IMG/VR virus record: IMGVR_UViG_3300044997_001199
Span: 124,001 to 188,000 of that record
Length of the DNA stretch: 64,000 nucleotides
Reading direction: 5' to 3' (one strand)
The notes beneath the pieces were generated by a model that was not told the DNA's origin, ran no database searches, and saw only the letters and a program-made list of their open reading frames with translations. This document shows positions 198-48,752 of the stretch, one piece after another; the first letter of the stretch is position 1, and the number at the start of each line of letters is the position of its first letter. Position numbers and translations under genes: made by a program.

Positions 198-755
198 CTA
201 CAACCTTTCGTTGATCACATTCCAATCTATTATTTTCCAAAAACTGTCAATGTACGCTTCTTTGTCCCACTGATATTGCAGTGAATATGCGTGTTCCCAC
301 ATATCTAAAAGTAGCGCAATGTCGGTGCGCACAGCATGATTGGCAATGGTCTTGATATCGCCTGCAGTGGAAAGGTAAACCCATCCTGATCCTTGTAGCT
401 TCATGGCAGTTTCCTTCACTGCATCCTGGAATGCTTCATAGGTCTTGAATTTGGATTCAATCAGTTCCAGCGCCGCGCCGCGCGGTCGGTTGCCTGCACG
501 TGGGGCACGAAACTGTGGAAAAAATCGGTTGTGCAGATAACTGCCTGCACGGTTGAAATCGGCATTGCCTTTACCGGCATTGTATCTTTTTGCATAGCCC
601 TTGGCCAAGTGATTGTAGTGGTAGTCTATGGTTTCTGCACTCATGACCGGAGCCAAGTCCTTCTCCCCGTAAGGCAGAGGTGTGGTTTCCAATTTGGTTG
701 GCCGAGTGGTGGCTTCCAGCAAGTCAAGATCATCGCGTATAGTTCGCTGTACCAT
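198..755 (-). CDS. sod: Fe/Mn superoxide dismutase
   Basis: LPY...L-P-VMSAET..YH; LHN.FF; GSGW; DMWEHAY metal-ligand motifs; start moved to ATG at 755. Confidence 0.93.
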   Translation of the reverse strand: MVQRTIRDDLDLLEATTRPTKLETTPLPYGEKDLAPVMSAETIDYHYNHLAKGYAKRYNAGKGNADFNRAGSYLHNRFFPQFRAPRAGNRPRGAALELIESKFKTYEAFQDAVKETAMKLQGSGWVYLSTAGDIKTIANHAVRTDIALLLDMWEHAYSLQYQWDKEAYIDSFWKIIDWNVINERL

Positions 756-756
756 G

Positions 757-975
757 TCAGTTTCTCCGTACAATGCGTCCTCGTGTAAGGTCGTAGGCAG
801 AAAATTCCATTTCTACTTCGTCTCCTAGCAGTACCTTAATATTGTTCTGTCGCATACGACCACTGAGTGTTGCCAGTGCAATATGCTCGTGACCGTGTAG
901 TTGTACTCTAAACATCGCACTAGGCAACACATCTATGACCCGTCCAGTGGTTTTTAATACATCTTCTTTACCCAA
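757..975 (-). CDS. infA: Translation initiation factor IF-1
   Basis: GRVIDVLPSAMFRVQL...LSGRMRQNNIKVLLGDEVEMEFSAYDLTRGRIV; TTG start at 975 gives the canonical 72 aa. Confidence 0.96.
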   Translation of the reverse strand: MGKEDVLKTTGRVIDVLPSAMFRVQLHGHEHIALATLSGRMRQNNIKVLLGDEVEMEFSAYDLTRGRIVRRN

Positions 976-1300
976 GTGAAAATTCAATCCTCTTTAACCG
1001 ATCCCAACGGAAACTGCGCCATGCATCTTTCTCGCAATCCCATACCACACACACTTCGGGATTGGGAACATGTTCCGTGACAGTATTTACTCGTTTGGCT
1101 CCAAGTATTTCGGAAAGAGTACAAATCATGTGTTTGGCACTGCCATCAGATTTTTCAAATTCAACTGAAACCGCGGTTTCGGTCAACAGTGTGCGCAGCC
1201 AGGTCTTGAAGTCTTCGCGGTCCTGATCCGATGCCCGGCAGTAAAAATTGCCCGGGTCATCGGCCAGTTCTCTCCATGTCTGAGATTGTTCTGAGTTTAT
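968..1300 (-). CDS. WYL_2/DUF2693-like SH3 beta-barrel protein; apparent ATA start
   Basis: V-F-K-DG..K-M-CTL...V-VWD-EK-AWRSFRWDRL pattern; AAGGAG lies 6 nt upstream of ATA at 1300. Confidence 0.6.
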   Translation of the reverse strand: MNSEQSQTWRELADDPGNFYCRASDQDREDFKTWLRTLLTETAVSVEFEKSDGSAKHMICTLSEILGAKRVNTVTEHVPNPEVCVVWDCEKDAWRSFRWDRLKRIEFSLG

Positions 1301-1494
1301 TGCGATCTCCTTGACCACAAAAAGCAGGCCAACTAGCCAGAAACAGCAGTCGGTCCTACTCATTGAAAAATTCAAAATCCATGCAGTTGATTTCAATACG
1401 ATAGTTTATTTTTGGTCAACTGAATTGTCTTGTTTTCTTTTTATGCCTTCGATAGATTTATAAAATACCTATCATAATATGACCAATATAGATT

Positions 1495-9104: not shown

Positions 9105-10286
9105 GTGGAAGTAAATTCATCTACATTTTGTGTTGCTCCATGGTTCCAGGCACGGCACGACAATACCAAACAATGGAGTTGTTGTGCCCTGATTGATTCC
9201 ACGAAAACCAACGGACCAACAAACGCGACCATGTCATGGCCTCAGTATTCGGCCTTGGAATACATGAACAGTGAGTACGTGACCTATGTCAGACAACAGC
9301 TCGGCCAAGGCAATCAATTGCCCGAATGCTCGGCCTGCTGGCGAGCAGAAAGCGCCGGTGAAATCAGTCTAAGGCAACGGTTAAACAATTTAATCACACA
9401 CGGAAAATGGGCTCTGAATCAACCCAACTGGGTTGATCTGTATCTTGGGTTCAAGCAGGACTGGAGTGTTGATTATTGGATCAGTGCAGACCTCAAACCC
9501 AGCAATATCTGTAATTTTGACTGTGTGATGTGCGATCCTGAGGACAGTACTACTGTGGCAAATTCCTGGAACGACCAACGATTGCATCCGGCCGTGATTG
9601 AAAGAACCAGTTCGACTTCTGCAATTGCAATCACTTCAAATTCCAAAGGGTCACGAACAGCATTGATACAAAATGCCATAGATTCTGGTGTGCGATGGTT
9701 GCAAATATTGGGCGGAGAACCATTGATTGACCGAGGTCTACTGAGATTTTTGTCTGCACAGGATTCTGCGATCAAAAAATCATTGCACCTGTTGTTTGTG
9801 ACCAACGGTAGTGTTGACCTTTCGACAGTTCGCGATCAACTGGGACCGTACAAAGGCATTACCTTTGTTGTGAGTCTCGAAGGCGTTGGTCAATGTCAAG
9901 ACTATGTTCGCAGACACAGTCACTGGCTCGACATCGAATCTAATATTTTAAAATATCAAGAGCGGTACAACAATCAAGGACTGTCGATCGCCCATACCCT
10001 ACAGTGTCTCACTGTGTGCCGTGTCGATGAACTGTTTGTCTGGGCGAGATCTCACGATATTTCTGTTGGTGTTTCTGAATTGGTACAACCCGAATTTTTA
10101 TCACTGGCGGTGTTGCCCGAGTCATTGAGAGAAAAAGCTCAACTGGCGCTGGGGAACCGCGCGGGATTTTTACGACAGATAGATTATCGTCCTCATTTGT
10201 TACCACAACTCAAACAATGGATGGATTTTTATGACCCCGATCAGACCTGGCGCGAAATACTGCCTGAATGGTCTCCGTTCCTCTAG
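9105..10286 (+). CDS. Radical SAM protein with N-terminal twitch/SPASM-like Cys cluster
   Basis: CNFDCVMC (CxxxCxxC); LGGEPL; TNGS; S-EGVG; N-terminal FCVAPW...CC...CSACW. Confidence 0.9.
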
Positions 10287-10870
10287 TCTCGCTGTGAAAT
10301 GATTTTATCTGCCAGACCATAGTCAACACTTTGATCTGCTGTCATAAAATTGTCTCGGTCCATGTCATGCTCCAGCACTGTGTATTCTTTCTTGGTATGT
10401 TTGACATAGATCTTAGTCAGCACTTCTTTCCAGCGTTGTAACTCACGATACTGGATTTCTACATCCGTGGCTTGACCCGACGCACCGCCCAACGGTTGAT
10501 GGATCATGTGGCGAGCATTGGGCAGGATGTATCTGTGTCCGGGCTCACCGGCCGCGGCCAACAGAGATCCCATGGACGCTGCCTGGCCCATCACGATGGT
10601 ATGCACTGCAGGTTTGATGAACTGCATGGTGTCGTAGATAGCCATGCCTGCTGTGACTGAACCTCCGGGAGAGTTGATATAAAATGAAATGGCCTTGTCA
10701 GGATTTTCACTTTCCAAAAACAGCAGTTGTGCAGTGACCAGACTGCTGCTGTGGCTATTGACTTCGCCATCCAGGATGATGATACGATCTCTCAGCAGCC
10801 GACTGTAGATATCATAACTGCGTTCACCTTTGCTGGTATTTTCTAAAACCATGGGCACCAGATTGGGCAT
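10283..10870 (-). CDS. clpP: ATP-dependent Clp protease proteolytic subunit
   Basis: [13 protein letters not shown]; YINSPGG; QAASMGS (catalytic Ser); MIHQP (His); DRDNFM (Asp). Confidence 0.98.
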
Positions 10871-10926: not shown

Positions 10927-12468
10927 ATGAGAGATTTGATCAATATCATAGAAAGCGTGGGTCTTGCAAATCGTCGTCCGGGAGATCGCTGGCAGAACTC
11001 ACAGGGCAACGAACTGATTTTTGTGGACTTGGTTTTCCATCCACGTGTGGCTGCATTCAAGAGTCCTCAAGACCTCAACGCTGCCATCGAGGCCGCAGCT
11101 CAATCCAATGGTATCGCTCCCACCGACATAGTTTGGAGCAACACGCCGGGATCAAACCTGGCGTTTGCCCTGGCACATTTTGTAGATTCCAGCAATCAAG
11201 ATTATTACATCGGCAGATACTTCCGCCAGATCAGCCCCAATGCCACAGAAAATCGTTTTCCCAATGATTTGCCTGGTGGGTATCGTTTGCAAAAGAGCTC
11301 GGCGGTCAAGGAACGTACAGGATACAAGCCCACAGATATCTTGACACAGTTGGACGACCTATCTCCGCAGGACATACTTGATCAGGTACGACAAAAATTT
11401 GGTGACCGCAGTGTCGAAGTCCAGATCATGGAAACATTTATGTCTGCAGATCGATTTCCCATCGTAGTTCCCGGTCAGGGTGTCAATTTTGCGGCCTTTA
11501 CCAACTATTTCTGCGAATTGCTACAGCCCATGGCTTTGGTCATGGGCAAGCCGGTGCAGGGAAATGCCGGCGACGCCGAAACCAAATTCCTTACACGGGG
11601 TGGGTATGGTGATTGCACCATTGGTTTTTCAGCCGGACAAACCTCTGGGTTGGTTGACAGCGTACTGACCAACTCATCCGGACAAAGCATCGGCATCAGC
11701 AGCAAAGCCAAAAGTGGAGCCAAAGCATCGGCGGTCAATCTTCAAAACAAAGTCGCCGAGATGACCAGAGATGCTGCCGGGCAGAAAATATTGGATCAAT
11801 ACCCCGACGCAGTGACCACAATACAAACCATTGCTCGCGACGGCTATATCAATGCACCCCTGAACCTTGCTGTGTTATTTGATATCATCACGGCGCAGGA
11901 AAAACAGCAGATCCTGTCTCTCCGCGGCCAATCGCCCGGGCAAGGTCTCGATCAGCTCACGCCAACGCTGAAAAAAATCTATCAGAGCAGGATCAGTGCC
12001 GACAGCAATCGCCGGGTACCGTTCTATCACATGCTGGCTGCCGTGGCACATCAAGTGGCCGACCATGTTAACCAACGCACTGACTTTGGTCCAGCGGCTT
12101 CGGCAATATTGAATCACGGAGCCTTTGTGCAGATCTATACCCGGGCGCAGCAACAGGGTGACAACATTGTTTTGAATGAATTCGAAGTACAGTATCCCAG
12201 CACTGCGATCACTCAGGTACTGCTACGTGCCGACAAAACCTACTACAGCACTGGTAACAAAGGTAATTTTACGTTCCAGATTTTGAAAAACGGCGCCCAA
12301 CCTTCAGGCACAGAAACAGATACGTCGGCAGTGGATACCAAACCCGACGTGGATCTTGATCTGATCGATCAAGCACCGCGTCTGACCGGCCCGGGCGCTC
12401 GTGCGGCGCGAACCCAGGCCGCACCGCGCATGACCTCTGCAGTGCTAGGGCGCGAGCGTCGGCGGTGA
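10927..12468 (+). CDS. Large hypothetical protein, probable virion/internal protein
   Basis: 513-aa ORF; [10 protein letters not shown] leader; TAAGTA late-type box upstream. Confidence 0.7.
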
Positions 12469-27423: not shown

Positions 27424-27492
27424 AGTGTTCTCCTTGGTTAAGCAAGAATAAGTCGAGATCCCCGGAATGGGCAATCTCTAGTGCTATTTATA
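27424..27492 (-). promoter_or_regulatory. Conserved leader copy C (dnaK)
   Basis: TATAAATA..GAGATT-G-CCC attcc GGG-GATCTC..CTTGCTTAA cc AAGGAG..ATG. Confidence 0.8.
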
Positions 27493-27517
27493 GACAAAAT
27501 CTCAAATCAAGTCAAGC

Positions 27518-27742
27518 TCAATACAGGGTTTTAGGCAATTCTTGGCTAGCCAAATATCTACGCCAACGAGATTTGGCCGCGGATTTTTTGCGTTTTCTCA
27601 CCGAAGTGGGTTTTTCGTAGAACTCATATTTCCTGAGATCCATGAGTATGCCCGAAGTCTGGACCTTTTTTTTGAATTTACGCAGTGCTTTTTCAACGTT
27701 TCCGTCGTTGACAAACACTCTGCGACCATTTAATTCACTCAT
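27518..27742 (-). CDS. rpsU: 30S ribosomal protein bS21
   Basis: V.V.DGNVEKALRKFKKKV..SGIL.DLR..EFYEKPTSVRKRKK.AA..R. Confidence 0.93.
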   Translation of the reverse strand: MSELNGRRVFVNDGNVEKALRKFKKKVQTSGILMDLRKYEFYEKPTSVRKRKKSAAKSRWRRYLASQELPKTLY

Positions 27743-38874: not shown

Positions 38875-39300
38875 TTAGGTAATGCGTTTGACAATATCTT
38901 GTTGGGTGACACTGCGTTTAGTGGTCGGACGATCTGGGCAGATATTTACGATGGTATCTGCTTCCCAATTAAGTGCATATTTTTCTTTATGCAGCAGGAC
39001 TAAATTGTCCGCACCCACTTCAACCAATTTCGCATCCACGATGTCATTTCTTTCTAACATTGCTAGAGTATACATGATTCCCAAGCCTCTAGCAACATTG
39101 CAATATATGTTGTCCTGCAATAGTTGCCAGGGATTTGGCCATTCCCGCCGATCGTCCCAGTGTAGGTAGTAGGTGGTCCACGGGGCCCGGAACCACCAGT
39201 GATTCACACGGGCGAGACAGGATTCTAACTCAAGATCTAAGACCGTGGCACGTAGTTGTGCCCAGTCCGTGAGTCTGGACGTGAAATCAGTGTGCCACAT
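38875..39300 (-). CDS. Hypothetical protein, possible transglutaminase-like Cys motif
   Basis: WP.PWQLL..N.YC.VARG. Confidence 0.6.
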   Translation of the reverse strand: MWHTDFTSRLTDWAQLRATVLDLELESCLARVNHWWFRAPWTTYYLHWDDRREWPNPWQLLQDNIYCNVARGLGIMYTLAMLERNDIVDAKLVEVGADNLVLLHKEKYALNWEADTIVNICPDRPTTKRSVTQQDIVKRIT

Positions 39301-41108
39301 CAGGCCAGATGGTTTAAACTGTAGTAGATAATACCACTGGTTCCAGTCGACGATGCACTGTAGAAAACTGTTGTCACATTTCCTGCGATCGGATCATATG
39401 ATTCAGAAACTGATAGTTGTACCTGTGGGTCCAAATTCTCAACATAATCGTCGCTGTAGGTTGCCACCGCCAGAGAACTGTCATCTGCACTGCCGCCCAC
39501 TGATGTGAGTGTTCCGGTGCGTACGCAGCCTAGCTCTCCAATGGTTCGAGTTATGGTATAATCCATACGGAAAGCCAGGAACCCACCATTGGCCACTGAT
39601 CTGTCCAATGATACTGCAAACAGTGTCTGATCCGTGGCTCCATCTGTTATTGTTGCTTGCTGTCCGGATTCTCGTACATAGGACCCCATCTGTATGTACT
39701 GCCCGCCCGATGTAACGATGCTGGTAGGAATCGTCACATCAAACAGATAGATCCTGGGGTATCCTGGACTTATCTGTGTTTGTGCGACTGTGCGCTGGAA
39801 AGTGTCGCCCAGGCTGATGTTGTCATTGGCATTGATAGAGATTATCGGTGTGGCAGGATTGGCATTGCCAAAGAAATGGTTGCCCACATCGTAAAATGTG
39901 TTGTAGGCCGTGGCATTGAACGAACAATTTTCAATAATCACGCCTTCCTCATAGATGTTGTCAAAAATGTTTTGTACGATCCGGAATCCAGTGGGGCCGC
40001 CGTTGACCGGAGCCGCGTCACCCAGCACTATGCCCTGGTATAGAGTATCAAACTGACCGTTGCTCACTGTGACACCGTGTGTGGCCTGATCGGTGTTGAT
40101 CGCATAAGTGACTCCGACAAATCGACACTTGTCAAGAATGACCTGTCGGCAAGTACGAGCAGATGTGCTCGAAAAACGCACCGCAGCTAGATCTTCGGTA
40201 GCAGTGCCAAGCGATGACTGATCCAGCGGGCCTTGAAAATCCACACTGTCCAGATAAATCTGATCGATCTGTTCCAGCAAACATATGTTATGAGAAACCG
40301 ACGAGTCGTTTCCACTGGTCGCAGTGCGCAGTGCCATGCTAGAAATTTCCACATTGGTAGGATAAGTGGCACCGGCCAGACCGATGTTGACCCCGGTCTG
40401 TTGTTTGCTGTCTGTGGTGCGAACCACATATTCCGGCAATGAAACCGGCGACCAGTACTCTGTATCGTTGAGCAAGATTCCAGTGGCCGGGACCGGCGAC
40501 GTGCTACGATAATAGTTGTCCAGCTCGTCAGCTACCAGCACACCTCCTGCGTAGGCAGTGTTGGCAGCCCAAAGAACGACTTCAAAACTGATGATAGAAC
40601 TGCTAGCGCCTTCGCCGTAGAGTTTGGCATAGGGCGGAATCAACAGAGTATTGGAAATCTTGTAGGTTCCGGCCGGAAAAAACAAACTGCGACGAATCTG
40701 AGTGTTGGATTGCACACAGTATAACTGGAACAGTGCGCGATTAATGGCTGCGGTGTCATCTGTAGCCCCATCGCCGCGCGCACCAAAATCGGTCACGATG
40801 GCATAACTATCCAGCCGACTCTGTAGACTCTGGCTGATTGGCGTGCCCGGGGTGGGTCCAGTTTGCGCTGTGTACCCTGCTGCATCGCCTCGGTAGGTAT
40901 AGGCCGTGGTAAATGCCAACAGGTCAGAAAATTCCGTGAGAATTTCGGTATTTCCGACCACCGGGGCACCTTCGGCCAGAGTACCGTTGCCGATGTAGAG
41001 ACGGCGCTGATCCACAGCCCAGCCAAGCTCTGCGCCGGCCAACGGTTGTGGAAGGTCTTCCTCTAGACCTTTGCGTTGGGTGATTCTACTTACTTGTACT
41101 ATTGCCAC
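39300..41108 (-). CDS. Tailspike/baseplate protein with pectate-lyase-3-like beta-helix
   Basis: N-terminal R.TQRKG...LA.AELGW..D.RRLYIGNG; VTDFGARGDG.TDDTAAINRA; LFFPAGTYKI. Confidence 0.8.
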   Translation of the reverse strand: MAIVQVSRITQRKGLEEDLPQPLAGAELGWAVDQRRLYIGNGTLAEGAPVVGNTEILTEFSDLLAFTTAYTYRGDAAGYTAQTGPTPGTPISQSLQSRLDSYAIVTDFGARGDGATDDTAAINRALFQLYCVQSNTQIRRSLFFPAGTYKISNTLLIPPYAKLYGEGASSSIISFEVVLWAANTAYAGGVLVADELDNYYRSTSPVPATGILLNDTEYWSPVSLPEYVVRTTDSKQQTGVNIGLAGATYPTNVEISSMALRTATSGNDSSVSHNICLLEQIDQIYLDSVDFQGPLDQSSLGTATEDLAAVRFSSTSARTCRQVILDKCRFVGVTYAINTDQATHGVTVSNGQFDTLYQGIVLGDAAPVNGGPTGFRIVQNIFDNIYEEGVIIENCSFNATAYNTFYDVGNHFFGNANPATPIISINANDNISLGDTFQRTVAQTQISPGYPRIYLFDVTIPTSIVTSGGQYIQMGSYVRESGQQATITDGATDQTLFAVSLDRSVANGGFLAFRMDYTITRTIGELGCVRTGTLTSVGGSADDSSLAVATYSDDYVENLDPQVQLSVSESYDPIAGNVTTVFYSASSTGTSGIIYYSLNHLA

Positions 41109-41127: not shown

Positions 41128-41844
41128 TCACATATTTAGTATGTAGTATTGTTCGACTCTTTTCCACCAGGCCCGAGTCCAGTGTTGAAATTCGGCACCT
41201 TCAATTACCCACTGCTGATACTGAGGCGGGGTGCTGTAAACTCCTGATTGAGTTTCTGTGGGCTTTACACACATCAGGATCACTCCGCGTTGTATGTGTG
41301 TGCCATGGATTTCGTTGTGCGCTTCGGCATAGGCCGCCAGTTGCAGTTTGTAATCGTCGATCCATTCCTCGCGCTTGGGACGATTGCTTTGTTTAAAATC
41401 CATGATGGCCGGTGTGCCTTGGTGCAGACCCACGCAATCAGTGGTACCTGCGTAAACCCGAGGAAAATACAAAGGAACTTCTATGCCCCAATATTCTGTG
41501 ACTTGACTGAGTCCGTGTTCTATCACGGTCTGTGCCATGTCGTGGCTGGGCCACGAAAACGGATTTGGTCCTCGCTCTTTCATGGCACCGTTGCGAACAT
41601 AGTGCTCGAGATAGGTGTGCATGCGAGTGCCGCGATTGGCTGCTTCTGTGGTTATGGCCTGTGCCTGTGCATGACCCACGCGATCGCGCCAGGCTTGCAA
41701 GGCTTGGCGTTTTTTCTCGGGTTGTGTGCGATCAAGAATGGTAGTGACCGAGGGCAATCGATCGCCAGTGGGAGTAGCGTATAGGCGCTGCCCGTTGACT
41801 GTTTCTCGAGTTAGTGCCTGATAATCAAATTTTGTGGCGATCAA
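41128..41844 (-). CDS. PD-(D/E)XK exonuclease
   Basis: LPSVTTIL; RGTRMH; EVPL; AGTTDCVG; IMDFKQS; QLAAYA; TTG start. Confidence 0.9.
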   Translation of the reverse strand: MIATKFDYQALTRETVNGQRLYATPTGDRLPSVTTILDRTQPEKKRQALQAWRDRVGHAQAQAITTEAANRGTRMHTYLEHYVRNGAMKERGPNPFSWPSHDMAQTVIEHGLSQVTEYWGIEVPLYFPRVYAGTTDCVGLHQGTPAIMDFKQSNRPKREEWIDDYKLQLAAYAEAHNEIHGTHIQRGVILMCVKPTETQSGVYSTPPQYQQWVIEGAEFQHWTRAWWKRVEQYYILNM

Positions 41845-42167
41845 ACGGAAAAACTTTCTCCACAGCCACATCTGGCACTTTCATTGGGGTTAATAAACTC
41901 AAACCCTTCATTTAATCCCTTTTTAGTCCAGTCCATGGTCAGGCCCTGGAGGTACACCAGGCTTTTACCATCGGCCCAGACTGAAACTCCATGACTTTCA
42001 TAATGAAAATGGTCACAGGTGGTGGGTGAGTGGTCCACATACTCCAGAGTGTATGCCAGGCCAGAGCAGCCAGTGGTTCTTACTCCAACCAAGATACCTA
42101 GACCTTTACCTCTTTTATCCAGGGATTCTCTGACCTTTGCAGCGGCTGTTTCAGTTAAAGAAATCAT
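41841..42167 (-). CDS. iscA: Fe-S cluster assembly protein IscA
   Basis: GVRTTGCSGLAY; F.F.NPN...RCGCGESF. Confidence 0.96.
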   Translation of the reverse strand: MISLTETAAAKVRESLDKRGKGLGILVGVRTTGCSGLAYTLEYVDHSPTTCDHFHYESHGVSVWADGKSLVYLQGLTMDWTKKGLNEGFEFINPNESARCGCGESFSV

Positions 42168-42541
42168 TAATGTTTTTTTCGATAATCGGTTATAGCAGCT
42201 CGGATCGCGTCTTCGGCAAGAATCGAGCAATGTATTTTAACTGGAGGGAGTGCAAGATGTTCGGCGATTTCAGTATTCTTGATAGTTGCTGCTTGGTCCA
42301 GAGTCTTACCTTTGACCCACTCCGTAACGAGTGATGAACTTGCGATAGCCGAGCCGCAGCCATAGGTCTTGAATTTCGCATCAGTGATTACTCCATCCTC
42401 TACTTTGATCTGCAGTTTCATGACATCGCCGCAGGCCGGCGCACCTACCATGCCGGTTCCTACTCCTGCTTCGTCCGTGTCAAACGTGCCCACGTTTCGG
42501 GGATTCTCATAATGATCAATGACTTTTTCTGAATATGCCAT
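42167..42541 (-). CDS. iscU: Fe-S scaffold IscU
   Basis: MAYSEKVIDHYENPRNVG; APACGDVM; YGCGSAIASSS; LPPVKIHC. Confidence 0.98.
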   Translation of the reverse strand: MAYSEKVIDHYENPRNVGTFDTDEAGVGTGMVGAPACGDVMKLQIKVEDGVITDAKFKTYGCGSAIASSSLVTEWVKGKTLDQAATIKNTEIAEHLALPPVKIHCSILAEDAIRAAITDYRKKH

Positions 42542-42779: not shown

Positions 42780-43124
42780 TCAATCTCCTTTTTTAGAGGC
42801 CCGCTTGGCCATGCGTGACACAATATCCCGGGCCTTGTCCACCGGCATTTTGACATCGGTGGATTCGCCGCCTTTGAATACCACGACTCCTGACGCAGGA
42901 TTCAACGGTTCCAACACATTGCTGAGAGGTGGCCGAGATATCATGTCACCAAGATTCGAGGCAGTGACGTTGATACCCAGCTGCCGAGCCATGTTTATAA
43001 ACGCTATCTGACTTATGTGTTTTTTGGTTGCAGTATCTTGGGCACGCCCTGCCAAAAATTCAACCAGACCCAGTAACTTGGCCGTTTCGGGATCCATGCC
43101 GAAATCGACTTCCAGTATGAGCAT
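42780..43124 (-). CDS. Probable head-associated protein
   Basis: MLILEV leader; late operon. Confidence 0.6.
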   Translation of the reverse strand: MLILEVDFGMDPETAKLLGLVEFLAGRAQDTATKKHISQIAFINMARQLGINVTASNLGDMISRPPLSNVLEPLNPASGVVVFKGGESTDVKMPVDKARDIVSRMAKRASKKGD

Positions 43125-43126
43125 GT

Positions 43127-44239
43127 TTATCTGCGAGCTCGACCCAGCGTGCCTTTGGTGCCCATGGACTTTCCGTCAGCAGGCTCTTCCGTGTCCAGAT
43201 CAGTGTCCACAGCAAGGTCCATGCTGTTGTCAGGAGGCATGGACATGTTGGTGTTGCCGGCGTCCATGGCTGCGTCCAAGGTCGGCGTCGCTGGCTGTTG
43301 TCCTGTGACAATCCCCAAGGCCACTTCCAACTGTTGTTTGGCAGCCTGTAGGTTTTTTACTAGACCAGTCAGTGCCGCAGTGGCATCGGTATTGAATTGA
43401 TTGGCCTGATCCATGCCGGTTTGGTTACGTATAGAATCTACCAAGGCCGGTAATTCTTTGAACTGCATCTCAGTGGTGTCCTCCAGCATGCCTTGCATCT
43501 TGTCTACCATGTCCTGAGCGGCCAGCACTACCTGTGCTTGCTGCACTTCGCTTTCGTTGAGAGTGCGATAGGCACTGCGCAGGCGGTTTTCTTGTTGCAT
43601 CAACGCAGCACTGACCACGAGTTTTTGTTCGTCGGGGCTGAGGGTTTGACCACTCTGGCTCTTCTTGAGCGCAGCAGCCAATTTGGGATCCTTGACGTTG
43701 ACCGCAGGCTTGGCAGCAGCAGGCTTGGCCGCGGCCGAACCTGATGATTGGGCAGAGGTAGCCGCACCTGTGGTAGGTACCATTTCTTCACGGATTTCTT
43801 GTTGCATCAACGCAGCACTGACCACGAGTTTTTGTTCGTCGGGGCTGAGGGTTTGACCACTCTGGCTCTTCTTGAGCGCAGCAGCCAATTTGGGATCCTT
43901 GACGTTGACCGCAGGCTTGGCAGCAGCAGGCTTGGCTGCGGCCGAACCTGATGATTGGGCAGAGGTAGCCGCACCTGTGGTAGGTACCATTTCTTCACGG
44001 ACTCGACTGGCCAACGCAGTTTCCATCACTACCAACTTGAGATATGCCGGGTCCTGCTCACGAAAATGATGAATCACAGTTTGTTTGTGTTCTTGCATGA
44101 GACCCCGCACGCGATCTAACATCTGGCAGGCCTGGCGCAGCGTCAGCTGGTCAAATGCGATACGAGTCCCAAAGTGATTTTCAAATACCTTGGTAGCATG
44201 GCACACTGGATCAGACGCAGCGAGTTCTTGCAGTTTCAT
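43127..44239 (-). CDS. Probable prohead core/scaffolding protein with 69-aa internal duplication
   Basis: MKLQEL leader; coiled-coil, Ala/Gln-rich; L-x-E sites. Confidence 0.6.
   Translation of the reverse strand: MKLQELAASDPVCHATKVFENHFGTRIAFDQLTLRQACQMLDRVRGLMQEHKQTVIHHFREQDPAYLKLVVMETALASRVREEMVPTTGAATSAQSSGSAAAKPAAAKPAVNVKDPKLAAALKKSQSGQTLSPDEQKLVVSAALMQQEIREEMVPTTGAATSAQSSGSAAAKPAAAKPAVNVKDPKLAAALKKSQSGQTLSPDEQKLVVSAALMQQENRLRSAYRTLNESEVQQAQVVLAAQDMVDKMQGMLEDTTEMQFKELPALVDSIRNQTGMDQANQFNTDATAALTGLVKNLQAAKQQLEVALGIVTGQQPATPTLDAAMDAGNTNMSMPPDNSMDLAVDTDLDTEEPADGKSMGTKGTLGRARR
43588..44001. repeat. 207-bp tandem duplication (206/207 identical)
   Basis: Units 43588-43794 and 43795-44001; single difference C43730/T43937. 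Confidence 0.95.
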
Positions 44240-44687
44240 TTTGGAATCCTCTAAGTTGTAAGTATTTAGTCAGTGAGATACATTTTTCTAACTGGTTGTT
44301 GATCTGTGCACGATAAAGATTTTTGGCCTGCAGTTTGGTCAGTACTCGATCGCGAAACTGCGGTTGTGAGCTGTGCAGTGCCAATTTTTTTCTTGCTTCG
44401 CAGTCTTGTTCAACAGTCGAATGTTGCTGATCCAGCATGGCGATGCTAGCGGCAAGATCGTGCCGTTGGAGATTTTTGGCCACGCACCAACTCAGTGCCA
44501 CTCGGCGATCGCTGAAATCGCCGAGCACATTGCTCATCGCCAACACACGACAACCATGTTTGGTAGGCCGCAGGGTGAATTTACCAAACGCTATCACGTC
44601 ACGGCCGTCACCGGGCACTATGATCTGACCAAGATATCGGTTCAGTTCGCGCTCGGCCCAGTGCTGTATTCGAGAATCTACATTCAT
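44211..44687 (-). CDS. Hypothetical late protein
   Basis: Coupled ORF. Confidence 0.65.
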   Translation of the reverse strand: MNVDSRIQHWAERELNRYLGQIIVPGDGRDVIAFGKFTLRPTKHGCRVLAMSNVLGDFSDRRVALSWCVAKNLQRHDLAASIAMLDQQHSTVEQDCEARKKLALHSSQPQFRDRVLTKLQAKNLYRAQINNQLEKCISLTKYLQLRGFQNETARTRCV

Positions 44688-44950
44688 AGAGTCCTGACGT
44701 ACTGACTTGTCAACCAACCAATCACTGCCAGCAATACGCCGATGAGGCTGACCCCCCAGCCTATGAGTTGACTGTTGTGCTTTTCGGACATCGAGGTCAC
44801 CATGTCAGCCACTTCCTTGACCAGGCGCTCCATGCTCGTGAGTTTTTCCTCCACGGTTTCCAGTTTGAGTTCCAGCATCTTGTAACGCTCGGCACAAAGT
44901 TCCACGTGTGCTTCAAGGCTCTTTTTTTCTATGTCGCGAGTATCGCTCAT
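44684..44950 (-). CDS. Coiled coil + C-terminal TM protein (XhlA/holin-like topology)
   Basis: LELKLETVEEKLTSME heptads; GWGVSLIGVLLAVIGWL. Confidence 0.6.
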   Translation of the reverse strand: MSDTRDIEKKSLEAHVELCAERYKMLELKLETVEEKLTSMERLVKEVADMVTSMSEKHNSQLIGWGVSLIGVLLAVIGWLTSQYVRTL

Positions 44951-44951
44951 G

Positions 44952-45374
44952 TCAAATCTCCGTTAACGTATTTACCGATTGGAACCAAATATTGCGGTCA
45001 GGATCCTGGATCGACACAACAGATTTTACCCCGGGCGATTCGTCCAGGTTAGTGATCATAGGAATACCCTCGCAGTCGCGATATAGATCTTCCAATTCTG
45101 AGCCACCAAACACTCCGTCATTTTCAACAGTAAATTCAAAACACCAGTGAGTGTCAATCTTGACCGGCACAGAAATGTCCTGCGGTTGGCATCTCAATCC
45201 GATGATTTGCAGCAAGGTTTCCCAGTTGCGCTGTTGATTTCGACTGCGATTCCAAGACTGCTGACCATCCACTAGGTTTCCGTTTCGATCACGGAATGGA
45301 ATCTGCGCGACACGGTAGTGGCCAATCACGCCTGTGGCTGCACAGTCAAACAGAGTTTTGCATCGAAATCGCAT
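44952..45374 (-). CDS. Hypothetical late protein
   Basis: ATG 7 nt after TAAATA box. Confidence 0.65.
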   Translation of the reverse strand: MRFRCKTLFDCAATGVIGHYRVAQIPFRDRNGNLVDGQQSWNRSRNQQRNWETLLQIIGLRCQPQDISVPVKIDTHWCFEFTVENDGVFGGSELEDLYRDCEGIPMITNLDESPGVKSVVSIQDPDRNIWFQSVNTLTEI

Positions 45375-45392
45375 GGCAAGATATTTAACGGC

Positions 45393-45423
45393 AAACAAAA
45401 ACCCCGGATTTTTATATCCGGGG
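45393..45423 (-). terminator. Strong rho-independent terminator
   Basis: CCCCGGAT-N6-ATCCGGGG then TTTTTGTTT on minus strand. Confidence 0.85.
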
Positions 45424-45447
45424 TCATTGTGCAACTGCTGACAACTA

Positions 45448-45846
45448 TTACGATGTGGCTAACTTGAAACCAACACTGGCAGCCGAATCCAGTTGGAAGC
45501 CAGTGTAAGTCACATTGGCAGCCGACAGCAGAGTTGCGGCGTTGGCATATGCGCCGGCAGGGTAGATGCCCAGCGACAAGCGTGTTCCGTCGACTTGATA
45601 GAAAGCCAGGGTCGAAGTCTGTTGCACTGCTTGCAGAACGGCAGCAACGTAACCGTTGGCCGAACCGATCACACCCTGTTGTGTGGCCATGGTAGCATTA
45701 GCGGTAAGCGAGAAGAAGTCTAGCTTGGGACCGGCCATGTTGACCGGAGTACCGGCAGTGGCCGTGGTAGGAGCGATATGACCGTTTTGTACGTCGATCG
45801 CAAATACTGGTTGTGCATCACCATTTACACGAGTTAATGAAGCCAT
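45448..45846 (-). CDS. Probable abundant virion structural protein
   Basis: Own TAAATA promoter, AAGGAG SD, own terminator; Ala/Thr/Gly-rich. Confidence 0.7.
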   Translation of the reverse strand: MASLTRVNGDAQPVFAIDVQNGHIAPTTATAGTPVNMAGPKLDFFSLTANATMATQQGVIGSANGYVAAVLQAVQQTSTLAFYQVDGTRLSLGIYPAGAYANAATLLSAANVTYTGFQLDSAASVGFKLATS

Positions 45847-45914
45847 TTTGTTTCTCCTTGATATATGGGGATTGACCCCTACTGTTATTTAGCGCCCGGA
45901 CCAAAAATCAAAAC

Positions 45915-47792
45915 CTAGGGATTGTTTCTTGCACGGTTCTTGGCTGTGAAATCAAATCGGTTGACGGCCTTGGCATAGCCCGCAGGTGTGCTCATGACCC
46001 AGCCTTCGTTGCCCGGACTCTGCTGATCCAGTTGTTCAAGCACTTGCATTTTGAGATCGTGCAACATCAAAAACAGTGCAAATGCCGCGATCATGCCGTC
46101 GGTGTTGGTCGTGGGCGACCGTAGATATTCCACAATGTTTTTGAATTTGCGTTCCGTGACACGTGTAGGCAACCATTGCAAAAAGCCCGACAGCAGATCG
46201 TTGAAGTTTCCGGTTCCGATCCGATGATTGATGTAGTCAACGCATAGTCTTGCCAGATCCGTGAGTTGCTGCCGTCTCATCTCCACCGGATTGAACAAGG
46301 TATCAATGGCTGTGCCGTGTTGTCGCAGAGTCTGGCCGATGCGCTGTACCAATTTGCTGTCCACGCCCACGTTCTTGGCACGTATGGGCTCCAGTAACAA
46401 CAGTCCCGGTACCTCATTGAATTTCACTCTGGCTATAGGCTGTTTGGGTTCACCCTGATCGGCATACATGCTGTGCATGGCTATGCCTGTTGTGCTATCG
46501 CCGATGCGTTGTCCCAGGGCAGATCTGGCTGGTATGCGATATTCCACGGTGTTGGGCTGAAACACATAGTTACCGGCCTGCAGCAGCGGCGTAGAAGTAT
46601 ACAATAGGTCGCCCTTGACATAACCACGGAAGTTGCTGGGGAGGCTTTGTTCCAACAAGGGGAACAGACTGGCGTACAATGCCATGAGTTCCCGGCGTTC
46701 GCCCGATCGCTGTTGTTGTATGCGAACCATCATGGCCGGCGAAGTGGCCAGACCATCGTAACCGCGAGCTTCAAATCCCGAACCATCGGTCAGCACAAAC
46801 TCACCGGTGGCCGGTTTGCGTCCAAATATCACTGCTGGTTTTCCGTCCCACTTGACCGTGGTAGTGGCTGCGGGATCGTCGACCACGTCGTGGATGATCG
46901 CCAAGGCCTGCTCGACTCCGGCTGAGGCTCGGCGGAACACCAGGTCTTCGAGGTGCTCAATGCCCTTGGCACGACCGCCCACACCGGGTTCGATTTCTTC
47001 CAATATCGCGGTGTCTTCAACCAAGGCCTGCATGCCTTGGTTGACAATGCGATCTCGCAGTCGCGCAATGAAGCTGACATCTGTTTCCTGCACTTGTTCA
47101 TCAAAGGGTATGCCTTCGCGTGCAGCATAGTCGCGAAAATCACGTAGTTTTTCTTCGCGACGAGGATCAGCGGCCAGTGCACGCACGATGCGCTCCACTG
47201 ACGCAAGATCTTCGGCGGCTGCTTGACTGTGCAGCAATCGCTTGGCGATTTCTGCAGGATCATCAGTGATCACACGTTCAGTGGCACGGTCAACCAGACC
47301 GTGCGTGACACTGATCTTGTATCCCAGAGACCTAGCCACACTGCTCAACAGCACGTTGCGAGTCGCGCCCTTGTAGGCCGACCCAGGATCCGCACGCATC
47401 ATGAACTTGGAGTAAGTGGGTTTGGGCACAAACATGAAATCGGTCTGCACATAGCCGCGGCGTGGCTCGCCACCAATGGGTGTGAGGAAATGCACTGCGG
47501 TGCCTGACCGCCGGACCCACTCGCGAGGATCTTGCCCTTGCTGACGAGCCCACTGTCCAAGTTGTTCAGCAAAGGTATTTTTGTCCACAGCTGTGCTGTC
47601 TACCGCAAGATCCAGATCGCCCGATGTAGGGCGAAGCCCAGTTGACCCTAGCATGTTGTTTTCTAGTTCAAGACCAGTGATAGATTCCAGCCAACGCACT
47701 GTGGACACGACATCGGCCAGGGCAATGCGCTGAGTGCGAGGTTGCCCTTTGGCATCTTTGAATACGTTGCCACCTTCGGCCAGCTGCATCAA
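45915..47792 (-). CDS. Two-domain protein: Pol-beta-like nucleotidyltransferase + DUF6267/KxDG ligase-like domain
   Basis: LGSTGLRPTSGDLDLAVD...VQTDFMF; then GIEHLEDL...TVKWDG.PAVIFG...KGDLLY...EGWV...K.V.R. Confidence 0.7.
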   Translation of the reverse strand: MMQLAEGGNVFKDAKGQPRTQRIALADVVSTVRWLESITGLELENNMLGSTGLRPTSGDLDLAVDSTAVDKNTFAEQLGQWARQQGQDPREWVRRSGTAVHFLTPIGGEPRRGYVQTDFMFVPKPTYSKFMMRADPGSAYKGATRNVLLSSVARSLGYKISVTHGLVDRATERVITDDPAEIAKRLLHSQAAAEDLASVERIVRALAADPRREEKLRDFRDYAAREGIPFDEQVQETDVSFIARLRDRIVNQGMQALVEDTAILEEIEPGVGGRAKGIEHLEDLVFRRASAGVEQALAIIHDVVDDPAATTTVKWDGKPAVIFGRKPATGEFVLTDGSGFEARGYDGLATSPAMMVRIQQQRSGERRELMALYASLFPLLEQSLPSNFRGYVKGDLLYTSTPLLQAGNYVFQPNTVEYRIPARSALGQRIGDSTTGIAMHSMYADQGEPKQPIARVKFNEVPGLLLLEPIRAKNVGVDSKLVQRIGQTLRQHGTAIDTLFNPVEMRRQQLTDLARLCVDYINHRIGTGNFNDLLSGFLQWLPTRVTERKFKNIVEYLRSPTTNTDGMIAAFALFLMLHDLKMQVLEQLDQQSPGNEGWVMSTPAGYAKAVNRFDFTAKNRARNNP

Positions 47793-48517
47793 ATCTTGCC
47801 CTGTCTACGCAACGTGGCAATAATCTGTGCGTTTTTGGGGTCAGCCGGATCCAACATTTCTCCTCCTATGGAAATCTGACCACCGGACTGTACTGTGACC
47901 CGAGGAGCTCCAGCCCGTTGGCGGCGCGGAGGCGACTGAAATGTTGCTAGGCTAGCTATGGTATAAAGTTTTTCTGCAGTGGTTTGCCACAAGCGAGAAA
48001 GTTTGGCCTGCTGAGCGTTTGAAGGTTCTGTGGCCACTGTGGCCAGTATGGTACCCATCGCGGTTTCCAGTTCTCGAACTGCATCAAGAGCTACTTTTGC
48101 TCCTTTGCCGCCATAGGCCTGAGGGTCGACCAATTTTGAAATTTCTCGGTAATCTTGTAATTCATCGTTGGACATCTTGTTCAGCGTGGAATTAAGTTGT
48201 GACACCAGGACACGCTTCAGTTGATCTCGAGGTATGTCCTTGACGCTGGTCACTCCGCGAGAACTGTAGGCTTGTGTCATGGCCTGTTGTATGGCCTGGC
48301 TCCACCCTGCATTGAGACTCTGTGCTATCTGATTGACCAGGGGCGCACTGGCTTGTGCGGCCCGACTTTGGGGATCAATGGCGAATCCCGGTGCATTTGA
48401 AGGTTGCGTGATACCTGCGGTACCGGCCTTCTGCGCCAGACGATTGACCGCACCTTGAAGGAACGATGATTGTGCACCTGGGTTGGTAAAGACATTGACA
48501 ATTTCATTGATCAGCAT
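47789..48517 (-). CDS. Probable internal head protein
   Basis: MLINEI leader; Gln/Ala-rich. Confidence 0.55.
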   Translation of the reverse strand: MLINEIVNVFTNPGAQSSFLQGAVNRLAQKAGTAGITQPSNAPGFAIDPQSRAAQASAPLVNQIAQSLNAGWSQAIQQAMTQAYSSRGVTSVKDIPRDQLKRVLVSQLNSTLNKMSNDELQDYREISKLVDPQAYGGKGAKVALDAVRELETAMGTILATVATEPSNAQQAKLSRLWQTTAEKLYTIASLATFQSPPRRQRAGAPRVTVQSGGQISIGGEMLDPADPKNAQIIATLRRQGKI

Positions 48518-48752
48518 GCACTCTCCTCACTGATCTGATGAATTTGCCTGGTTCTTTCATGCGCATGGCATTGAGAAGTTTGCGAGTGAGAATTTCTGCC
48601 TGCTCGGGAGAATATTCAGACTCGATCTGTTCGATCAAGCGTATGGCAGCATCAATGAGATTGTTGGCTCGGCTTTCGATCAAAAGCCGGCGGTCACGCT
48701 CGACGTAGAGGCTGTCCAGTTCTTCTAGTATGCTGCGAGTCTTTTTTTGCAT
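48504..48752 (-). CDS. Conserved hypothetical protein (MQKKTRSILEEL...)
   Basis: TAAATA box upstream; intact 82 aa. Confidence 0.75.
   Translation of the reverse strand: MQKKTRSILEELDSLYVERDRRLLIESRANNLIDAAIRLIEQIESEYSPEQAEILTRKLLNAMRMKEPGKFIRSVRRVHADQ

What the first reader, a model, noticed from the sequence alone, without database searches (positions are those of the whole stretch)
198..48752. Shared (I/L)-x-E N-terminal leaders suggest capsid targeting, including on the SOD
Late proteins begin MRDLINIIE|S (10927), MLILE|V (43124), MKLQE|L (44239), MMQLAE|G (47792), MLINE|I (48517), MQKKTRSILE|E (48752). T4 gp21 protease cleaves after (I/L)-x-E and such leaders target internal proteins to the prohead. 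The SOD carries an extra N-terminal RTIRDDLDLLE|A segment of the same style before the SOD fold. Inference: SOD is packaged and injected, or protects the virion from superoxide.
Basis: inference. Interest (0 to 1): 0.6.

Follow-up and report, generated by a model that had tools for sequence, protein, structure and literature searches.

The report
T4-style cleavable leaders, including on SOD
An uncultured jumbo phage related to Pseudomonas phage PA5oct carries short N-terminal leaders ending in (Ile/Leu)-x-Glu on several virion-cluster proteins and on an iron/manganese superoxide dismutase; phage T4 uses such leaders to load proteins into its head and then trims them off, so the antioxidant enzyme probably travels inside the capsid, though this is not yet proven.

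Summary
The raw count is what chance gives: 8.6% of N-termini in this genome carry [IL]-x-E within 10 residues, against 6.8% of internal windows. The signal lies in conservation.

- **SOD leader:** 30 distinct leaders from 61 relatives vary in length (9-15 aa) and sequence. All keep Glu at P1 and Leu/Ile at P3, directly before an invariant mature N-terminus.
- **Window 10927 family:** it shows the same pattern.
- **Leader similarity:** a profile built from SOD leaders alone finds the N-termini of two unrelated proteins as its best hits in this genome.
- **Cluster 42780-48752:** four families keep M-x-(I/L)-x-E or RS(I/L)LE across six genomes.
- **Protease:** complete relatives and PA5oct encode a T4 gp21-type prohead protease (Peptidase_S77). 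The window's 61%-complete fragment does not hold it.
- **Mass spectrometry:** PA5oct's SOD orthologue has an ISIAE|A leader and is annotated as detected by ESI-MS/MS in virion preparations, but obvious non-structural enzymes were detected too.

Most likely these are gp21-type propeptides or capsid-targeting leaders, with SOD as head cargo (about 0.55). Cleavage and packaging remain untested.

The parts
198..755 (-). Fe/Mn superoxide dismutase gene, 185 aa from ATG 755. It is compact, with all four metal ligands present.
   Evidence: Pfam Sod_Fe_C 9e-23 and Sod_Fe_N. PDB FeSOD hits at 1e-23; His, His, Asp and His ligands align. AF2 model pLDDT 80.8.
714..755 (-). SOD leader MVQRTIRDDLDLLE (14 aa) ending in L-L-E, followed by ATTRPTKLETTPLPY. 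Proposed gp21-type propeptide or targeting leader.
   Evidence: 61 relatives give 30 unique leaders of 9-15 aa: P1 Glu 30/30, P3 Leu/Ile 30/30, P5 Ile/Leu/Val 30/30, P8 Arg 24/30, then an invariant A[ST]T. PA5oct orthologue: MNDSIKKYISIAE|A. The model places the leader as a low-confidence helix outside the fold.
757..975 (-). IF-1 (infA-like) gene immediately upstream of SOD. Its stop lies 1 nt before the SOD ATG, so the two are probably one operon.
   Evidence: Pfam eIF-1a 4e-18. The same adjacency is seen in G001.
10927..12468 (+). 513-aa protein of unknown function. Its leader MRDLINIIE (10927-10953) comes directly before the conserved [10 protein letters not shown].
   Evidence: No Pfam or PHROG hit. 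In 18 IMG/VR loci plus G001 the leader is 9-14 aa and always ends in h-x-E directly before [SGA]xGL[AG]xRxPG. It is the best hit in this genome for a profile built only from SOD leaders.
48504..48752 (-). 82-aa family A protein with leader MQKKTRSILE|E.
   Evidence: phrog_11854 'virion structural protein' 5e-11. PA5oct gp259 reads VSTRRSILE|E. RS[IL]LE|E is present in all six genomes.
47789..48517 (-). 242-aa family B protein with leader MLINE|I.
   Evidence: M-x-I-x-E in 5 of 6 genomes. G001 has Asp at position 5 and L-T-E at position 15. It is the positional counterpart of PA5oct gp258 (MS-detected), but with no detectable similarity.
45915..47789 (-). 624-aa family C protein. Leader MQLAE|GGNVF, then a Pol-beta-type nucleotidyltransferase-like N-domain and a DUF6267 C-domain.
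   Evidence: DUF6267 5e-28. The leader is 4-6 aa, M..(L/V)xE before an invariant GGNVF, in six genomes. PA5oct gp253, the N-domain homologue (MS-detected), lacks the leader.
43127..44239 (-). 370-aa family D protein with leader MKLQE|L. It is helical and Ala/Gln-rich, with an acidic tail ending LGRxRR.
   Evidence: phrog_14154 'virion structural protein' 2e-14. Orthologue of PA5oct gp247 (MS-detected, MFLKDVKITE|S). MKL[QTHNK]EL in relatives. Preceded by CTAAATA.
42780..43124 (-). 114-aa family E protein with leader MLILE|V.
   Evidence: 73 loci give 37 unique N-termini: M1, R/K2, I/F/L3, a freely variable position 4, E5 37/37, mostly V6.
48772..48778 (-). CTAAATA motif, similar to a T4 late promoter, 26 nt upstream of the family A start. 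Further copies lie at 45886-45892, 44263-44269 and 41133-41139.
   Evidence: The motif lies within 80 nt upstream of 10 of 277 genes, against about 0.9 expected from its genome density.
39300..41108 (-). Pectate-lyase-fold tail-spike-like protein that closes the virion-protein block. Orthologue of PA5oct gp243 (MS-detected).
   Evidence: Pfam PF12708 2e-16 and tail-spike PHROGs. Synteny.
10283..10870 (-). ClpP protease. It is not the prohead protease; its PA5oct orthologue gp212 is annotated 'head maturation protease'.
   Evidence: Pfam CLP_protease 2e-79. 48% identity to PA5oct 180349-181020.

Best explanation
The window comes from a roughly 350-kb jumbo phage with a T4-type head: a gp23-like capsid protein, a gp20-like portal and a gp21-like Peptidase_S77 prohead protease.

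A subset of its proteins carries short N-terminal leaders of 5-15 residues ending in (I/L)-x-E. Two styles are seen:
- M-R-(D/E)-x-(I/L)-(N/D)-(L/I)-h-E on SOD, on the 513-aa protein at 10927 and on a 135-aa protein elsewhere in the genome
- a minimal M-x-(I/L)-x-E on proteins of the virion-protein cluster 48752-42780

[quoted passage not shown] The prohead protease then cuts after the Glu, at Glu|Ala in SOD. The mature protein stays inside the DNA-filled head and leaves with the DNA at infection.

On this reading the Fe/Mn SOD is head cargo. It would remove superoxide around the packaged or incoming genome, or in the newly infected cell.

What is shown: the motif, its conservation, its presence on unrelated proteins, the protease in complete relatives, and the MS annotation of the PA5oct orthologues. 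What is inferred: cleavage, targeting, packaging of SOD, and what SOD does there.
For: 1. **SOD leader.** P1 Glu and P3 Leu/Ile are invariant in 30 unique variants, while length (9-15 aa) and the P4, P6 and P7 residues vary. The invariant mature N-terminus AST(R/K)P.KLETTPLPY starts right after the Glu. PA5oct's orthologue is only 38% identical overall, yet has ...ISIAE|A at the same place.
2. **Window 10927 family.** It has the same architecture: a variable 9-14-aa leader with h-x-E abutting the conserved block.
3. **Leader profile.** An HMM built only from SOD leaders ranks the extreme N-termini of 10927 and of G000 103644 as its two best hits in this genome. The window's own SOD, which was not used to build it, ranks third (scores 5.3, 4.4 and 4.1; next best 1.8).
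4. **Families A-E of the cluster.** The motif residues are kept across six genomes and up to 73 loci, with the x positions free. Constraint on alternate residues (P3 and P1) is what an extended, protease-bound substrate would show.
5. **Protease.** Peptidase_S77 is present in 4 of 5 complete relatives (E about 1e-25), in PA5oct and in Vibrio phage 2.275.O. The capsid protein is a T4 gp23 homologue.
6. **Head module.** Genes of G001 and PA5oct begin the same way: MILNE, MNKFEQLIE, protease MALYLRE / MARQLYE (T4 gp21 has LIE-9), and capsid protein MSQELLE..ALLE..VILE34 (PMC9026906).
7. **PA5oct annotation.** SOD gp223 and most of the syntenic block gp258-gp243 carry the ESI-MS/MS note (PMC7318152). 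M-x-[IL]-x-E occurs in 6/90 MS-detected genes against 6/318 others, p=0.03.
8. **Conservation between G000 and G001.** Among [IL]-x-Z triplets conserved between the two genomes, Z=Glu shows the highest enrichment in the first 20 residues relative to internal regions: 17 observed against about 8.5 expected.
9. **T4 precedents.** The L/I-X-E motif, a Glu-Ala bond, the 10-19-aa CTS, the 6-aa Alt propeptide (ITE-6), and foreign enzymes packaged through a CTS.
Against: - There is no direct evidence of cleavage or of SOD in capsids for this phage.
- The PA5oct virion list was obtained from a 'purified phage lysate' and includes clearly non-structural enzymes (RNR, thymidylate synthase, ligase, UvsX, FtsH), so the SOD detection may be carry-over.
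- The broad motif is not enriched genome-wide. It is also not enriched among PA5oct MS-detected proteins: 15/90 against 33/318, p=0.14.
- SOD sits in an operon with IF-1, among chaperone and protease genes, without the late-type CTAAATA motif.
- Vibrio phage 2.275.O has the protease, but its SOD lacks an N-terminal leader.
- PA5oct gp253 and gp170 are MS-detected but lack the motif that their orthologues here have.
- Conserved N-termini such as MKLQEL could simply be part of the folded protein.
- The window's own contig lacks the protease gene, though it is only 61% complete.
- A 5-residue leader is shorter than any T4 targeting sequence shown to be sufficient.
Confidence: 0.55

Rival explanations
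1. The leaders are conserved for a reason unrelated to capsid assembly. For example, they could be N-terminal amphipathic helices used for oligomerisation or partner binding, or sequences that favour translation initiation. On this view SOD is an ordinary cytoplasmic auxiliary enzyme that detoxifies superoxide in the infected cell, and its detection in PA5oct virion preparations is contamination.
For: - SOD is co-transcribed with IF-1 and lies among DnaK, Hsp20, ClpXPS, bS21 and Fe-S assembly genes rather than structural genes.
- The AF2 model makes the leader a helix.
- The PA5oct MS list contains many enzymes.
- The N-termini of families A and D are conserved beyond the motif itself.
- The Vibrio phage SOD has no N-terminal leader.
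Against: - A helix-packing or translation explanation does not predict an invariant Glu exactly at the junction with the conserved mature domain, together with variable leader length.
- It does not predict constraint on alternate residues (P3 and P1) with P2 and P4 free.
- It does not predict the same leader style on unrelated proteins.
- Cellular Fe/Mn SODs start at the fold and lack the extension.
Confidence: 0.3
2. The shared motif is coincidence. [IL]-x-E is short, and N-termini that carry it are expected at this frequency.
For: - N-terminal frequency is 8.6%, against 6.8% internally.
- M-x-[IL]-x-E: 6 observed against 2.8 expected in G000, and 5 against 5.6 in G001.
- About six instances are expected in a window of about 87 genes.
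Against: - Motif positions are invariant over 30 unique SOD leaders, 37 unique family E N-termini and the 10927 family, despite turnover at neighbouring positions.
- The instances are clustered, p about 0.001.
- The profile built only from SOD leaders picks out other N-termini.
Confidence: 0.07
3. The leaders are N-terminal recognition tags for the phage's own Clp machinery (ClpX, ClpP and ClpS in the window; ClpA in PA5oct). They would set the lifetime of these proteins rather than their location.
For: - The phage encodes ClpP, ClpX and ClpS.
- The M-R-D-h-h leader loosely resembles Met-basic-hydrophobic N-terminal ClpX tags. This resemblance is from my own knowledge and was not tested here.
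Against: - It does not explain the invariant Glu at the leader/mature junction.
- It does not explain the match to the gp21 motif.
- It does not explain the same motif on the capsid protein, the prohead protease and scaffold-region proteins.
- It does not explain the MS detection of the orthologues in virions.
Confidence: 0.05

Closest known systems
Phage T4 capsid targeting sequences of internal proteins IPI, IPII and IPIII (Mullaney and Black 1996; reviewed in PMC9026906)
   Same: Short N-terminal propeptides (10-19 aa in T4, 9-15 aa here) end in (I/L)-x-E. They sit on otherwise unrelated proteins and resemble one another. They occur in a phage lineage with a gp21-type protease, and the cut is at Glu|Ala.
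   Different: The leader sequence differs: M-R-D-x-I-N-L-V-E here against the T4 leader. The cargo is a recognisable metabolic enzyme rather than small basic proteins. Targeting and cleavage are untested here.
Phage T4 Alt ADP-ribosyltransferase (6-aa N-terminal propeptide cut at ITE-6 and C-terminal cut at LTE-619; PMC5694885)
   Same: It is an enzyme packaged in the head and ejected, with a very short M-x-x-I-x-E-type N-terminal propeptide. That is the best precedent for the M-x-(I/L)-x-E leaders of families B-E and for an enzyme as cargo. The C-terminal ...MLDE|S extension on the Vibrio phage SOD recalls Alt's C-terminal propeptide.
   Different: The enzymes have different activities. There is no evidence yet that 5-residue leaders here are removed or needed.
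Pseudomonas phage PA5oct gp223 and the gp259-gp243 virion-protein block (Lood et al. 2020, PMC7318152)
   Same: These are orthologous or syntenic genes. The SOD orthologue has the same kind of leader and is flagged ESI-MS/MS. PA5oct also has the S77 protease, a gp23-like capsid protein, ClpXPS, bS21 and Hsp20.
   Different: Identity is only about 25-55%, and GC is 33% against about 50% here. PA5oct gp223 is annotated 'hypothetical protein'. In the text I searched, the paper mentions neither superoxide dismutase nor propeptide cleavage.
Propeptide processing in phiKZ, 201phi2-1 and SPN3US giant phages (PMC5694885, PMC9026906)
   Same: A diverged gp21-like protease cuts many head and ejection proteins after Glu in a three-residue motif.
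   Different: Those phages use (S/A/G)-x-E and mostly long propeptides of more than 100 aa. Here the motif is the T4-type (I/L)-x-E with short leaders.
Chlorovirus PBCV-1 Cu/Zn superoxide dismutase A245R (Kang et al. 2014; reviewed in PMC7019647)
   Same: A virus-encoded SOD that is packaged in the virion and is thought to lower superoxide early in infection.
   Different: It is a eukaryotic giant virus with a Cu/Zn enzyme rather than Fe/Mn, has no cleavable leader mechanism described, and has an unrelated capsid architecture.

Membership tests
T4-type gp21-processed propeptide / capsid targeting sequence | The phage encodes a gp21-family (Peptidase_S77) prohead protease | tested here: inconclusive
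   Absent from the window's own 215-kb fragment, which is 61% complete and lacks the head module. Present in 4 of 5 complete clade members, in PA5oct and in Vibrio phage 2.275.O.
T4-type gp21-processed propeptide / capsid targeting sequence | Short N-terminal leader ending in (L/I)-x-E immediately before the mature domain | tested here: met
   P1 Glu and P3 Leu/Ile are invariant in the SOD family, near-invariant in family E (P3 Phe in 2 of 37), and mostly so in the 10927 family (P3 Val in some). Leader length is 5-15 aa.
T4-type gp21-processed propeptide / capsid targeting sequence | Similar leaders on otherwise unrelated proteins | tested here: met
   A profile built only from SOD leaders finds the N-termini of window 10927 and G000 103644 as its top hits. 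M-x-(I/L)-x-E occurs on four unrelated cluster families.
T4-type gp21-processed propeptide / capsid targeting sequence | The leader is actually removed by cleavage after Glu | not testable with these tools
   This needs N-terminal or semi-tryptic peptide data. The PA5oct peptide tables are not held.
T4-type gp21-processed propeptide / capsid targeting sequence | The protein is present inside mature heads | tested here: inconclusive
   The PA5oct orthologues, including SOD gp223, carry the ESI-MS/MS note. The same list contains evident non-structural enzymes.
T4-type gp21-processed propeptide / capsid targeting sequence | The leader is necessary and sufficient for encapsidation | not testable with these tools
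   This requires leader-reporter fusions in a cultured relative.
Fe/Mn superoxide dismutase | Both SOD domains recognised above the curated thresholds | tested here: met
   Sod_Fe_C scores 80.7 bits (cut-off 20.9) and Sod_Fe_N 27.3 bits (cut-off 27). PDB FeSODs match at 1e-23.
Fe/Mn superoxide dismutase | Four metal ligands (His, His, Asp, His) conserved | tested here: met
   YHY, LHN and D..WEH align with the ligand positions of solved FeSODs and are invariant in 36 relatives.
Fe/Mn superoxide dismutase | Dismutase activity and metal specificity | not testable with these tools
   This needs an enzyme assay. The helical hairpin is about 18 residues shorter than in solved enzymes.
PA5oct-like (Arenbergviridae-related) T4-core jumbo phages | Shared gene content and synteny with PA5oct | tested here: met
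   69 of about 267 proteins have PA5oct hits. The block 48752-35449 is collinear with gp259-gp240. Identities are low, so this is not the same genus or family by any usual threshold.

The most novel reading that the evidence does not exclude
A widespread clade of uncultured jumbo phages of about 340-365 kb uses modular, T4-like cleavable leaders to load a set of enzymes into the capsid. The cargo would include a catalytically intact Fe/Mn superoxide dismutase, a nucleotidyltransferase/ligase-like protein and a 513-aa protein of unknown function, all delivered with the DNA. That would make SOD the first antioxidant 'ejection protein' known in a bacteriophage. It would also give a sequence rule for reading the injected proteome of uncultured phages directly from metagenomes.
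Probability: 0.4. Interest if true: 0.7.

Novelty: new member of a known kind. Interest (0 to 1): 0.55.

Why it matters
If the leaders are what they look like, they work as a readable address label. From sequence alone one could list which proteins of an uncultured jumbo phage ride inside the head and enter the host with the DNA. That class of proteins includes anti-defence factors in T4.

A packaged SOD would be a new kind of phage cargo. It suggests that oxidative damage to the genome, or an early host superoxide response, is a selective pressure on these phages.

The prediction can be tested at once in the cultured relative PA5oct, whose SOD orthologue has the same leader and has already been seen in virion preparations.

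Tried and rejected
- **Nucleotide search:** megablast of two window stretches against GenBank phages found nothing. tblastn with the 370-aa protein found nothing.
- **Broad motif ([IL]xE within 10-13 residues):** not enriched genome-wide. Not enriched in MS-detected against other PA5oct genes (p=0.14-0.25). I therefore dropped simple enrichment as evidence.
- **Genome-wide M-x-[IL]-x-E counts:** near expectation in G001, 5 against 5.6.
- **Protease in the window's own genome:** the search was negative, which I attribute to the missing 39% of the genome.
- **PA5oct peptide data:** the supplementary peptide tables are not held, and the preprint text gives no coverage data.
- **Positional counterparts:** pairwise comparison of window 42780 with PA5oct gp246, and of window 47789 with gp258, showed no detectable similarity. 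Those links rest on synteny only.
- **G001 orthologue of 10927:** I first read it as lacking the motif because of Asp at position 9. The wider family shows the site is the I-T-E five residues further on.
- **DUF6267 in cyanophages:** the homologues do not start with the leader, so it is not a generic feature of that family.
- **Retrieval bias:** one search pattern for family D loci was the N-terminus itself. I count only the neighbouring family E N-termini from that scan as unbiased.

Full report
**What the window is**

The 64-kb window is bases 124001-188000 of a 215-kb IMG/VR virus record estimated to be 61% complete. It has no close nucleotide relative among GenBank phages.

Protein searches tie it to the 287-kb Pseudomonas jumbo phage PA5oct and, more loosely, to other jumbo phages of about 350 kb or more. 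69 proteins have PA5oct counterparts. Window genes 48752 to 35449 (minus strand) are collinear with PA5oct gp259 to gp240.

Much closer uncultured relatives are abundant in IMG/VR. They include complete 340-365-kb genomes, and one (G001, 352,754 bp with terminal repeats) shares 157 orthologues with this genome at a median 51.5% identity.

**Checking the observation**

Two starts need correcting.
- The 625-aa ORF most likely starts at ATG 47789, which overlaps the upstream stop. That gives MQLAE|G.
- SOD starts at ATG 755, behind a GGAGA Shine-Dalgarno and 1 nt after the stop of an IF-1 gene. That gives MVQRTIRDDLDLLE|ATTRPTKLETTPLPY.

The SOD assignment is secure. Both Pfam SOD domains match, solved FeSODs match at 1e-23, and all four metal ligands are present. 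Solved SODs align only from about residue 23, so the extension is real. The AF2 model shows it as a low-confidence helix outside the fold.

**Is it more than chance?**

By counting alone it is not.
- [IL]-x-E within the first 10 residues occurs in 8.6% of the genome's proteins and in 6.8% of internal windows. Six instances in a window of about 87 genes is what chance predicts.
- The same holds for PA5oct when proteins detected by mass spectrometry are compared with the rest (15/90 against 33/318, p=0.14).
- Only the strict M-x-[IL]-x-E form shows something. Four of nine consecutive genes in the window carry it (permutation p about 0.001). In PA5oct it occurs in 6/90 MS-detected genes against 6/318 others (p=0.03).

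**The comparative evidence**

- **SOD.** 61 relatives give 30 distinct leaders. Length runs from 9 to 15 residues and several positions turn over freely. P1 is Glu in 30/30, P3 is Leu/Ile in 30/30, P5 is Ile/Leu/Val in 30/30 and P8 is Arg in 24/30. The invariant mature sequence A(S/T)T(R/K)P.KLETTPLPY begins immediately after the Glu. PA5oct's orthologue is 38% identical overall and reads MNDSIKKYISIAE|AASS.
- **Window 10927 family.** It behaves the same way. Leaders of 9-14 residues ([60 protein letters not shown] and others) always end in h-x-E directly before the conserved (S/G/A)xGL(A/G)xRxPG.
- **Leader profile.** An HMM built only from SOD leaders of relatives was run against all ORFs of this genome. 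Its three best hits are the extreme N-terminus of 10927, the N-terminus of an unrelated 135-aa protein (MRDIINLLE|A, G000 103644-104051) and the window's own SOD. There is a clear score gap to the next hit. Unrelated proteins therefore share one leader style, which is the hallmark of the T4 internal-protein CTS.
- **The cluster.** Family A keeps RS(I/L)LE|E. Family B keeps M-x-I-x-E in 5 of 6 genomes. Family C keeps a 4-6-residue leader ending (L/V)-x-E before an invariant GGNVF. Family D keeps MKL(Q/T/H/N/K)EL. Family E has Glu at position 5 in 37 of 37 unique N-termini from 73 loci and Ile/Phe/Leu at position 3, while position 4 takes seven different residues.
- **G000 against G001.** Across all orthologue pairs, conserved [IL]-x-Z triplets are most over-represented in the first 20 residues when Z is Glu. 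There are 17 observed against about 8.5 expected from the internal rate.

**The machinery that would read the motif**

Peptidase_S77, the T4 gp21 family, is found in 4 of 5 complete clade genomes, in PA5oct (gp331, itself MS-detected) and in Vibrio phage 2.275.O. The neighbouring capsid protein is a clear T4 gp23 homologue (3e-40).

The window's own fragment has no S77 hit. The portal-protease-capsid module seen in PA5oct and G001 found no counterpart among this fragment's ORFs, so I expect it to lie in the missing part of the genome.

In G001 and PA5oct the head-module genes begin in the same style:
- a small protein next to the portal: MILNE|L and MKINDIITE|G
- MNKFEQLIE|Y
- the protease: MALYLRE|N and MARQLYE|Y
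- a scaffold-position protein: ...DLINE|E
- the capsid protein: MSQELLE|S...ALLE|G...VILE34|N

The published gp21 motif is L/I-X-E, with a Glu-Ala bond first seen in gp22 and LIE-9 in gp21 itself. T4 CTS leaders are 10-19 residues, with processing determined at the P3 and P1 positions. Asp at P1 blocks processing but not targeting. T4 Alt, a packaged enzyme, loses just six N-terminal residues at ITE-6 and a C-terminal piece at LTE-619.

**Virion association**

The flagged proteins include the SOD orthologue gp223. They also include most of the block syntenic with the window cluster: gp258, gp257, gp254-249, gp247-245 and gp243.

The weight of this evidence is limited. The material was a purified lysate, the paper itself counts seven 'virion-unrelated enzymes', and RNR, thymidylate synthase, ligase, UvsX, FtsH and others are on the list.

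**Timing**

CTAAATA resembles the T4 late promoter core (that comparison is from my own knowledge). It lies within 80 nt upstream of 10 genes, against about 0.9 expected. In the window it precedes the starts at 48752, 45846, 44239 and 41108. 'Late' is therefore plausible for the cluster. Nothing comparable precedes SOD or 10927.

**Weighing**

The best reading is that these are gp21-type propeptides that also serve, as in T4, to place proteins in the prohead, and that SOD is one of the cargoes. I put this at about 0.55.

The main rival, at about 0.3, is that the leaders are conserved for another reason and SOD is a cytoplasmic auxiliary enzyme whose MS detection is carry-over. In its favour:
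- SOD sits in an operon with IF-1 among chaperone, Clp and Fe-S genes.
- The Vibrio phage SOD has no N-terminal leader.
- Some PA5oct orthologues are MS-detected without the motif.

Pure chance is no longer tenable for the conserved families. A Clp-degron role does not explain the junctional Glu.

**Novelty**

The mechanism would be the known T4 one, carried into a different and largely uncultured jumbo-phage lineage. The searches of the papers library I ran turned up no report of a phage-packaged Fe/Mn SOD, nor of CTS-type leaders in PA5oct-like phages. Those searches were not exhaustive. The nearest functional analogue is the virion-packaged Cu/Zn SOD of chlorovirus PBCV-1.

**Limits**

- Gene starts were chosen by a simple rule plus comparison between genomes.
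- The PA5oct MS status was read from annotation notes.
- Retrieval of family D loci was partly seeded by the N-terminus itself.
- The complex prediction could not be run.

Noticed in passing
window 43584-44001: A 207-bp unit is present in two tandem copies (99% matching) inside the family D gene. It duplicates a 69-aa Ala/Lys-rich segment that is single-copy in the five relatives examined. It could be a real recent duplication or an assembly artefact.
   Followed up: partly
window 757-975, 24693-30421, 10283-10870: The phage carries a translation and proteostasis gene set: IF-1, ribosomal protein bS21, a full-length Hsp70/DnaK, Hsp20, ClpS, ClpX and ClpP. All have strong Pfam matches.
   Followed up: partly
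window 41841-42541: IscU (NifU_N, 6e-53) and an IscA/HesB-type Fe-S assembly gene sit between the virion-protein cluster and the exonuclease. PA5oct has no genes at this position. Together with the Fe/Mn SOD they point to an iron and oxidative-stress theme.
   Followed up: no
window 45915-47789: The 624-aa protein has two parts. The N-terminal domain carries a Pol-beta nucleotidyltransferase-like GS...GDLDL signature. The C-terminal domain is DUF6267 and contains a K-W-D-G motif reminiscent of ligase motif I. DUF6267 is common in T4-like cyanophages, next to a cytidylyltransferase. This may be an RNA or DNA end-repair enzyme.
   Followed up: partly
L111:1168-1737 (Vibrio phage 2.275.O SOD): This SOD has no N-terminal leader. 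It has a 22-residue C-terminal extension, ...KMLDE|SVNIRHLINFISK, containing L-D-E and an IRHLINFI stretch that resembles the N-terminal MRDLINII-type leaders. It may be a C-terminal propeptide like that of T4 Alt.
   Followed up: no
G000:C1:27546-27932 and 85774-86433 (outside the window): Two proteins begin MRAREFIRE| and MKAREFITE|. The second is an orthologue of the MS-detected PA5oct gp135. From memory, this leader style resembles the T4 internal-protein CTS (M-K-x-x-x-E-F-I-x-E).
   Followed up: no
window 48772-48778, 45886-45892, 44263-44269, 41133-41139 (minus strand): CTAAATA is about tenfold enriched upstream of genes in this genome and may be the late promoter core for a gp55-type sigma factor. 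PA5oct annotates such a factor (gp346).
   Followed up: partly
L006:4349-5020 (PA5oct gp212): PA5oct gp212 is annotated 'head maturation protease'. It is the orthologue (48% identity) of the window's bona fide ClpP. The true gp21-type protease is gp331, so the annotation looks misleading.
   Followed up: partly
window 43127-44239 and relatives (alignment A2): Family D proteins end in an acidic low-complexity tail followed by an invariant LGRxRR C-terminus, and they are predominantly helical and Gln/Ala-rich. This looks like a scaffold or internal-core protein.
   Followed up: no
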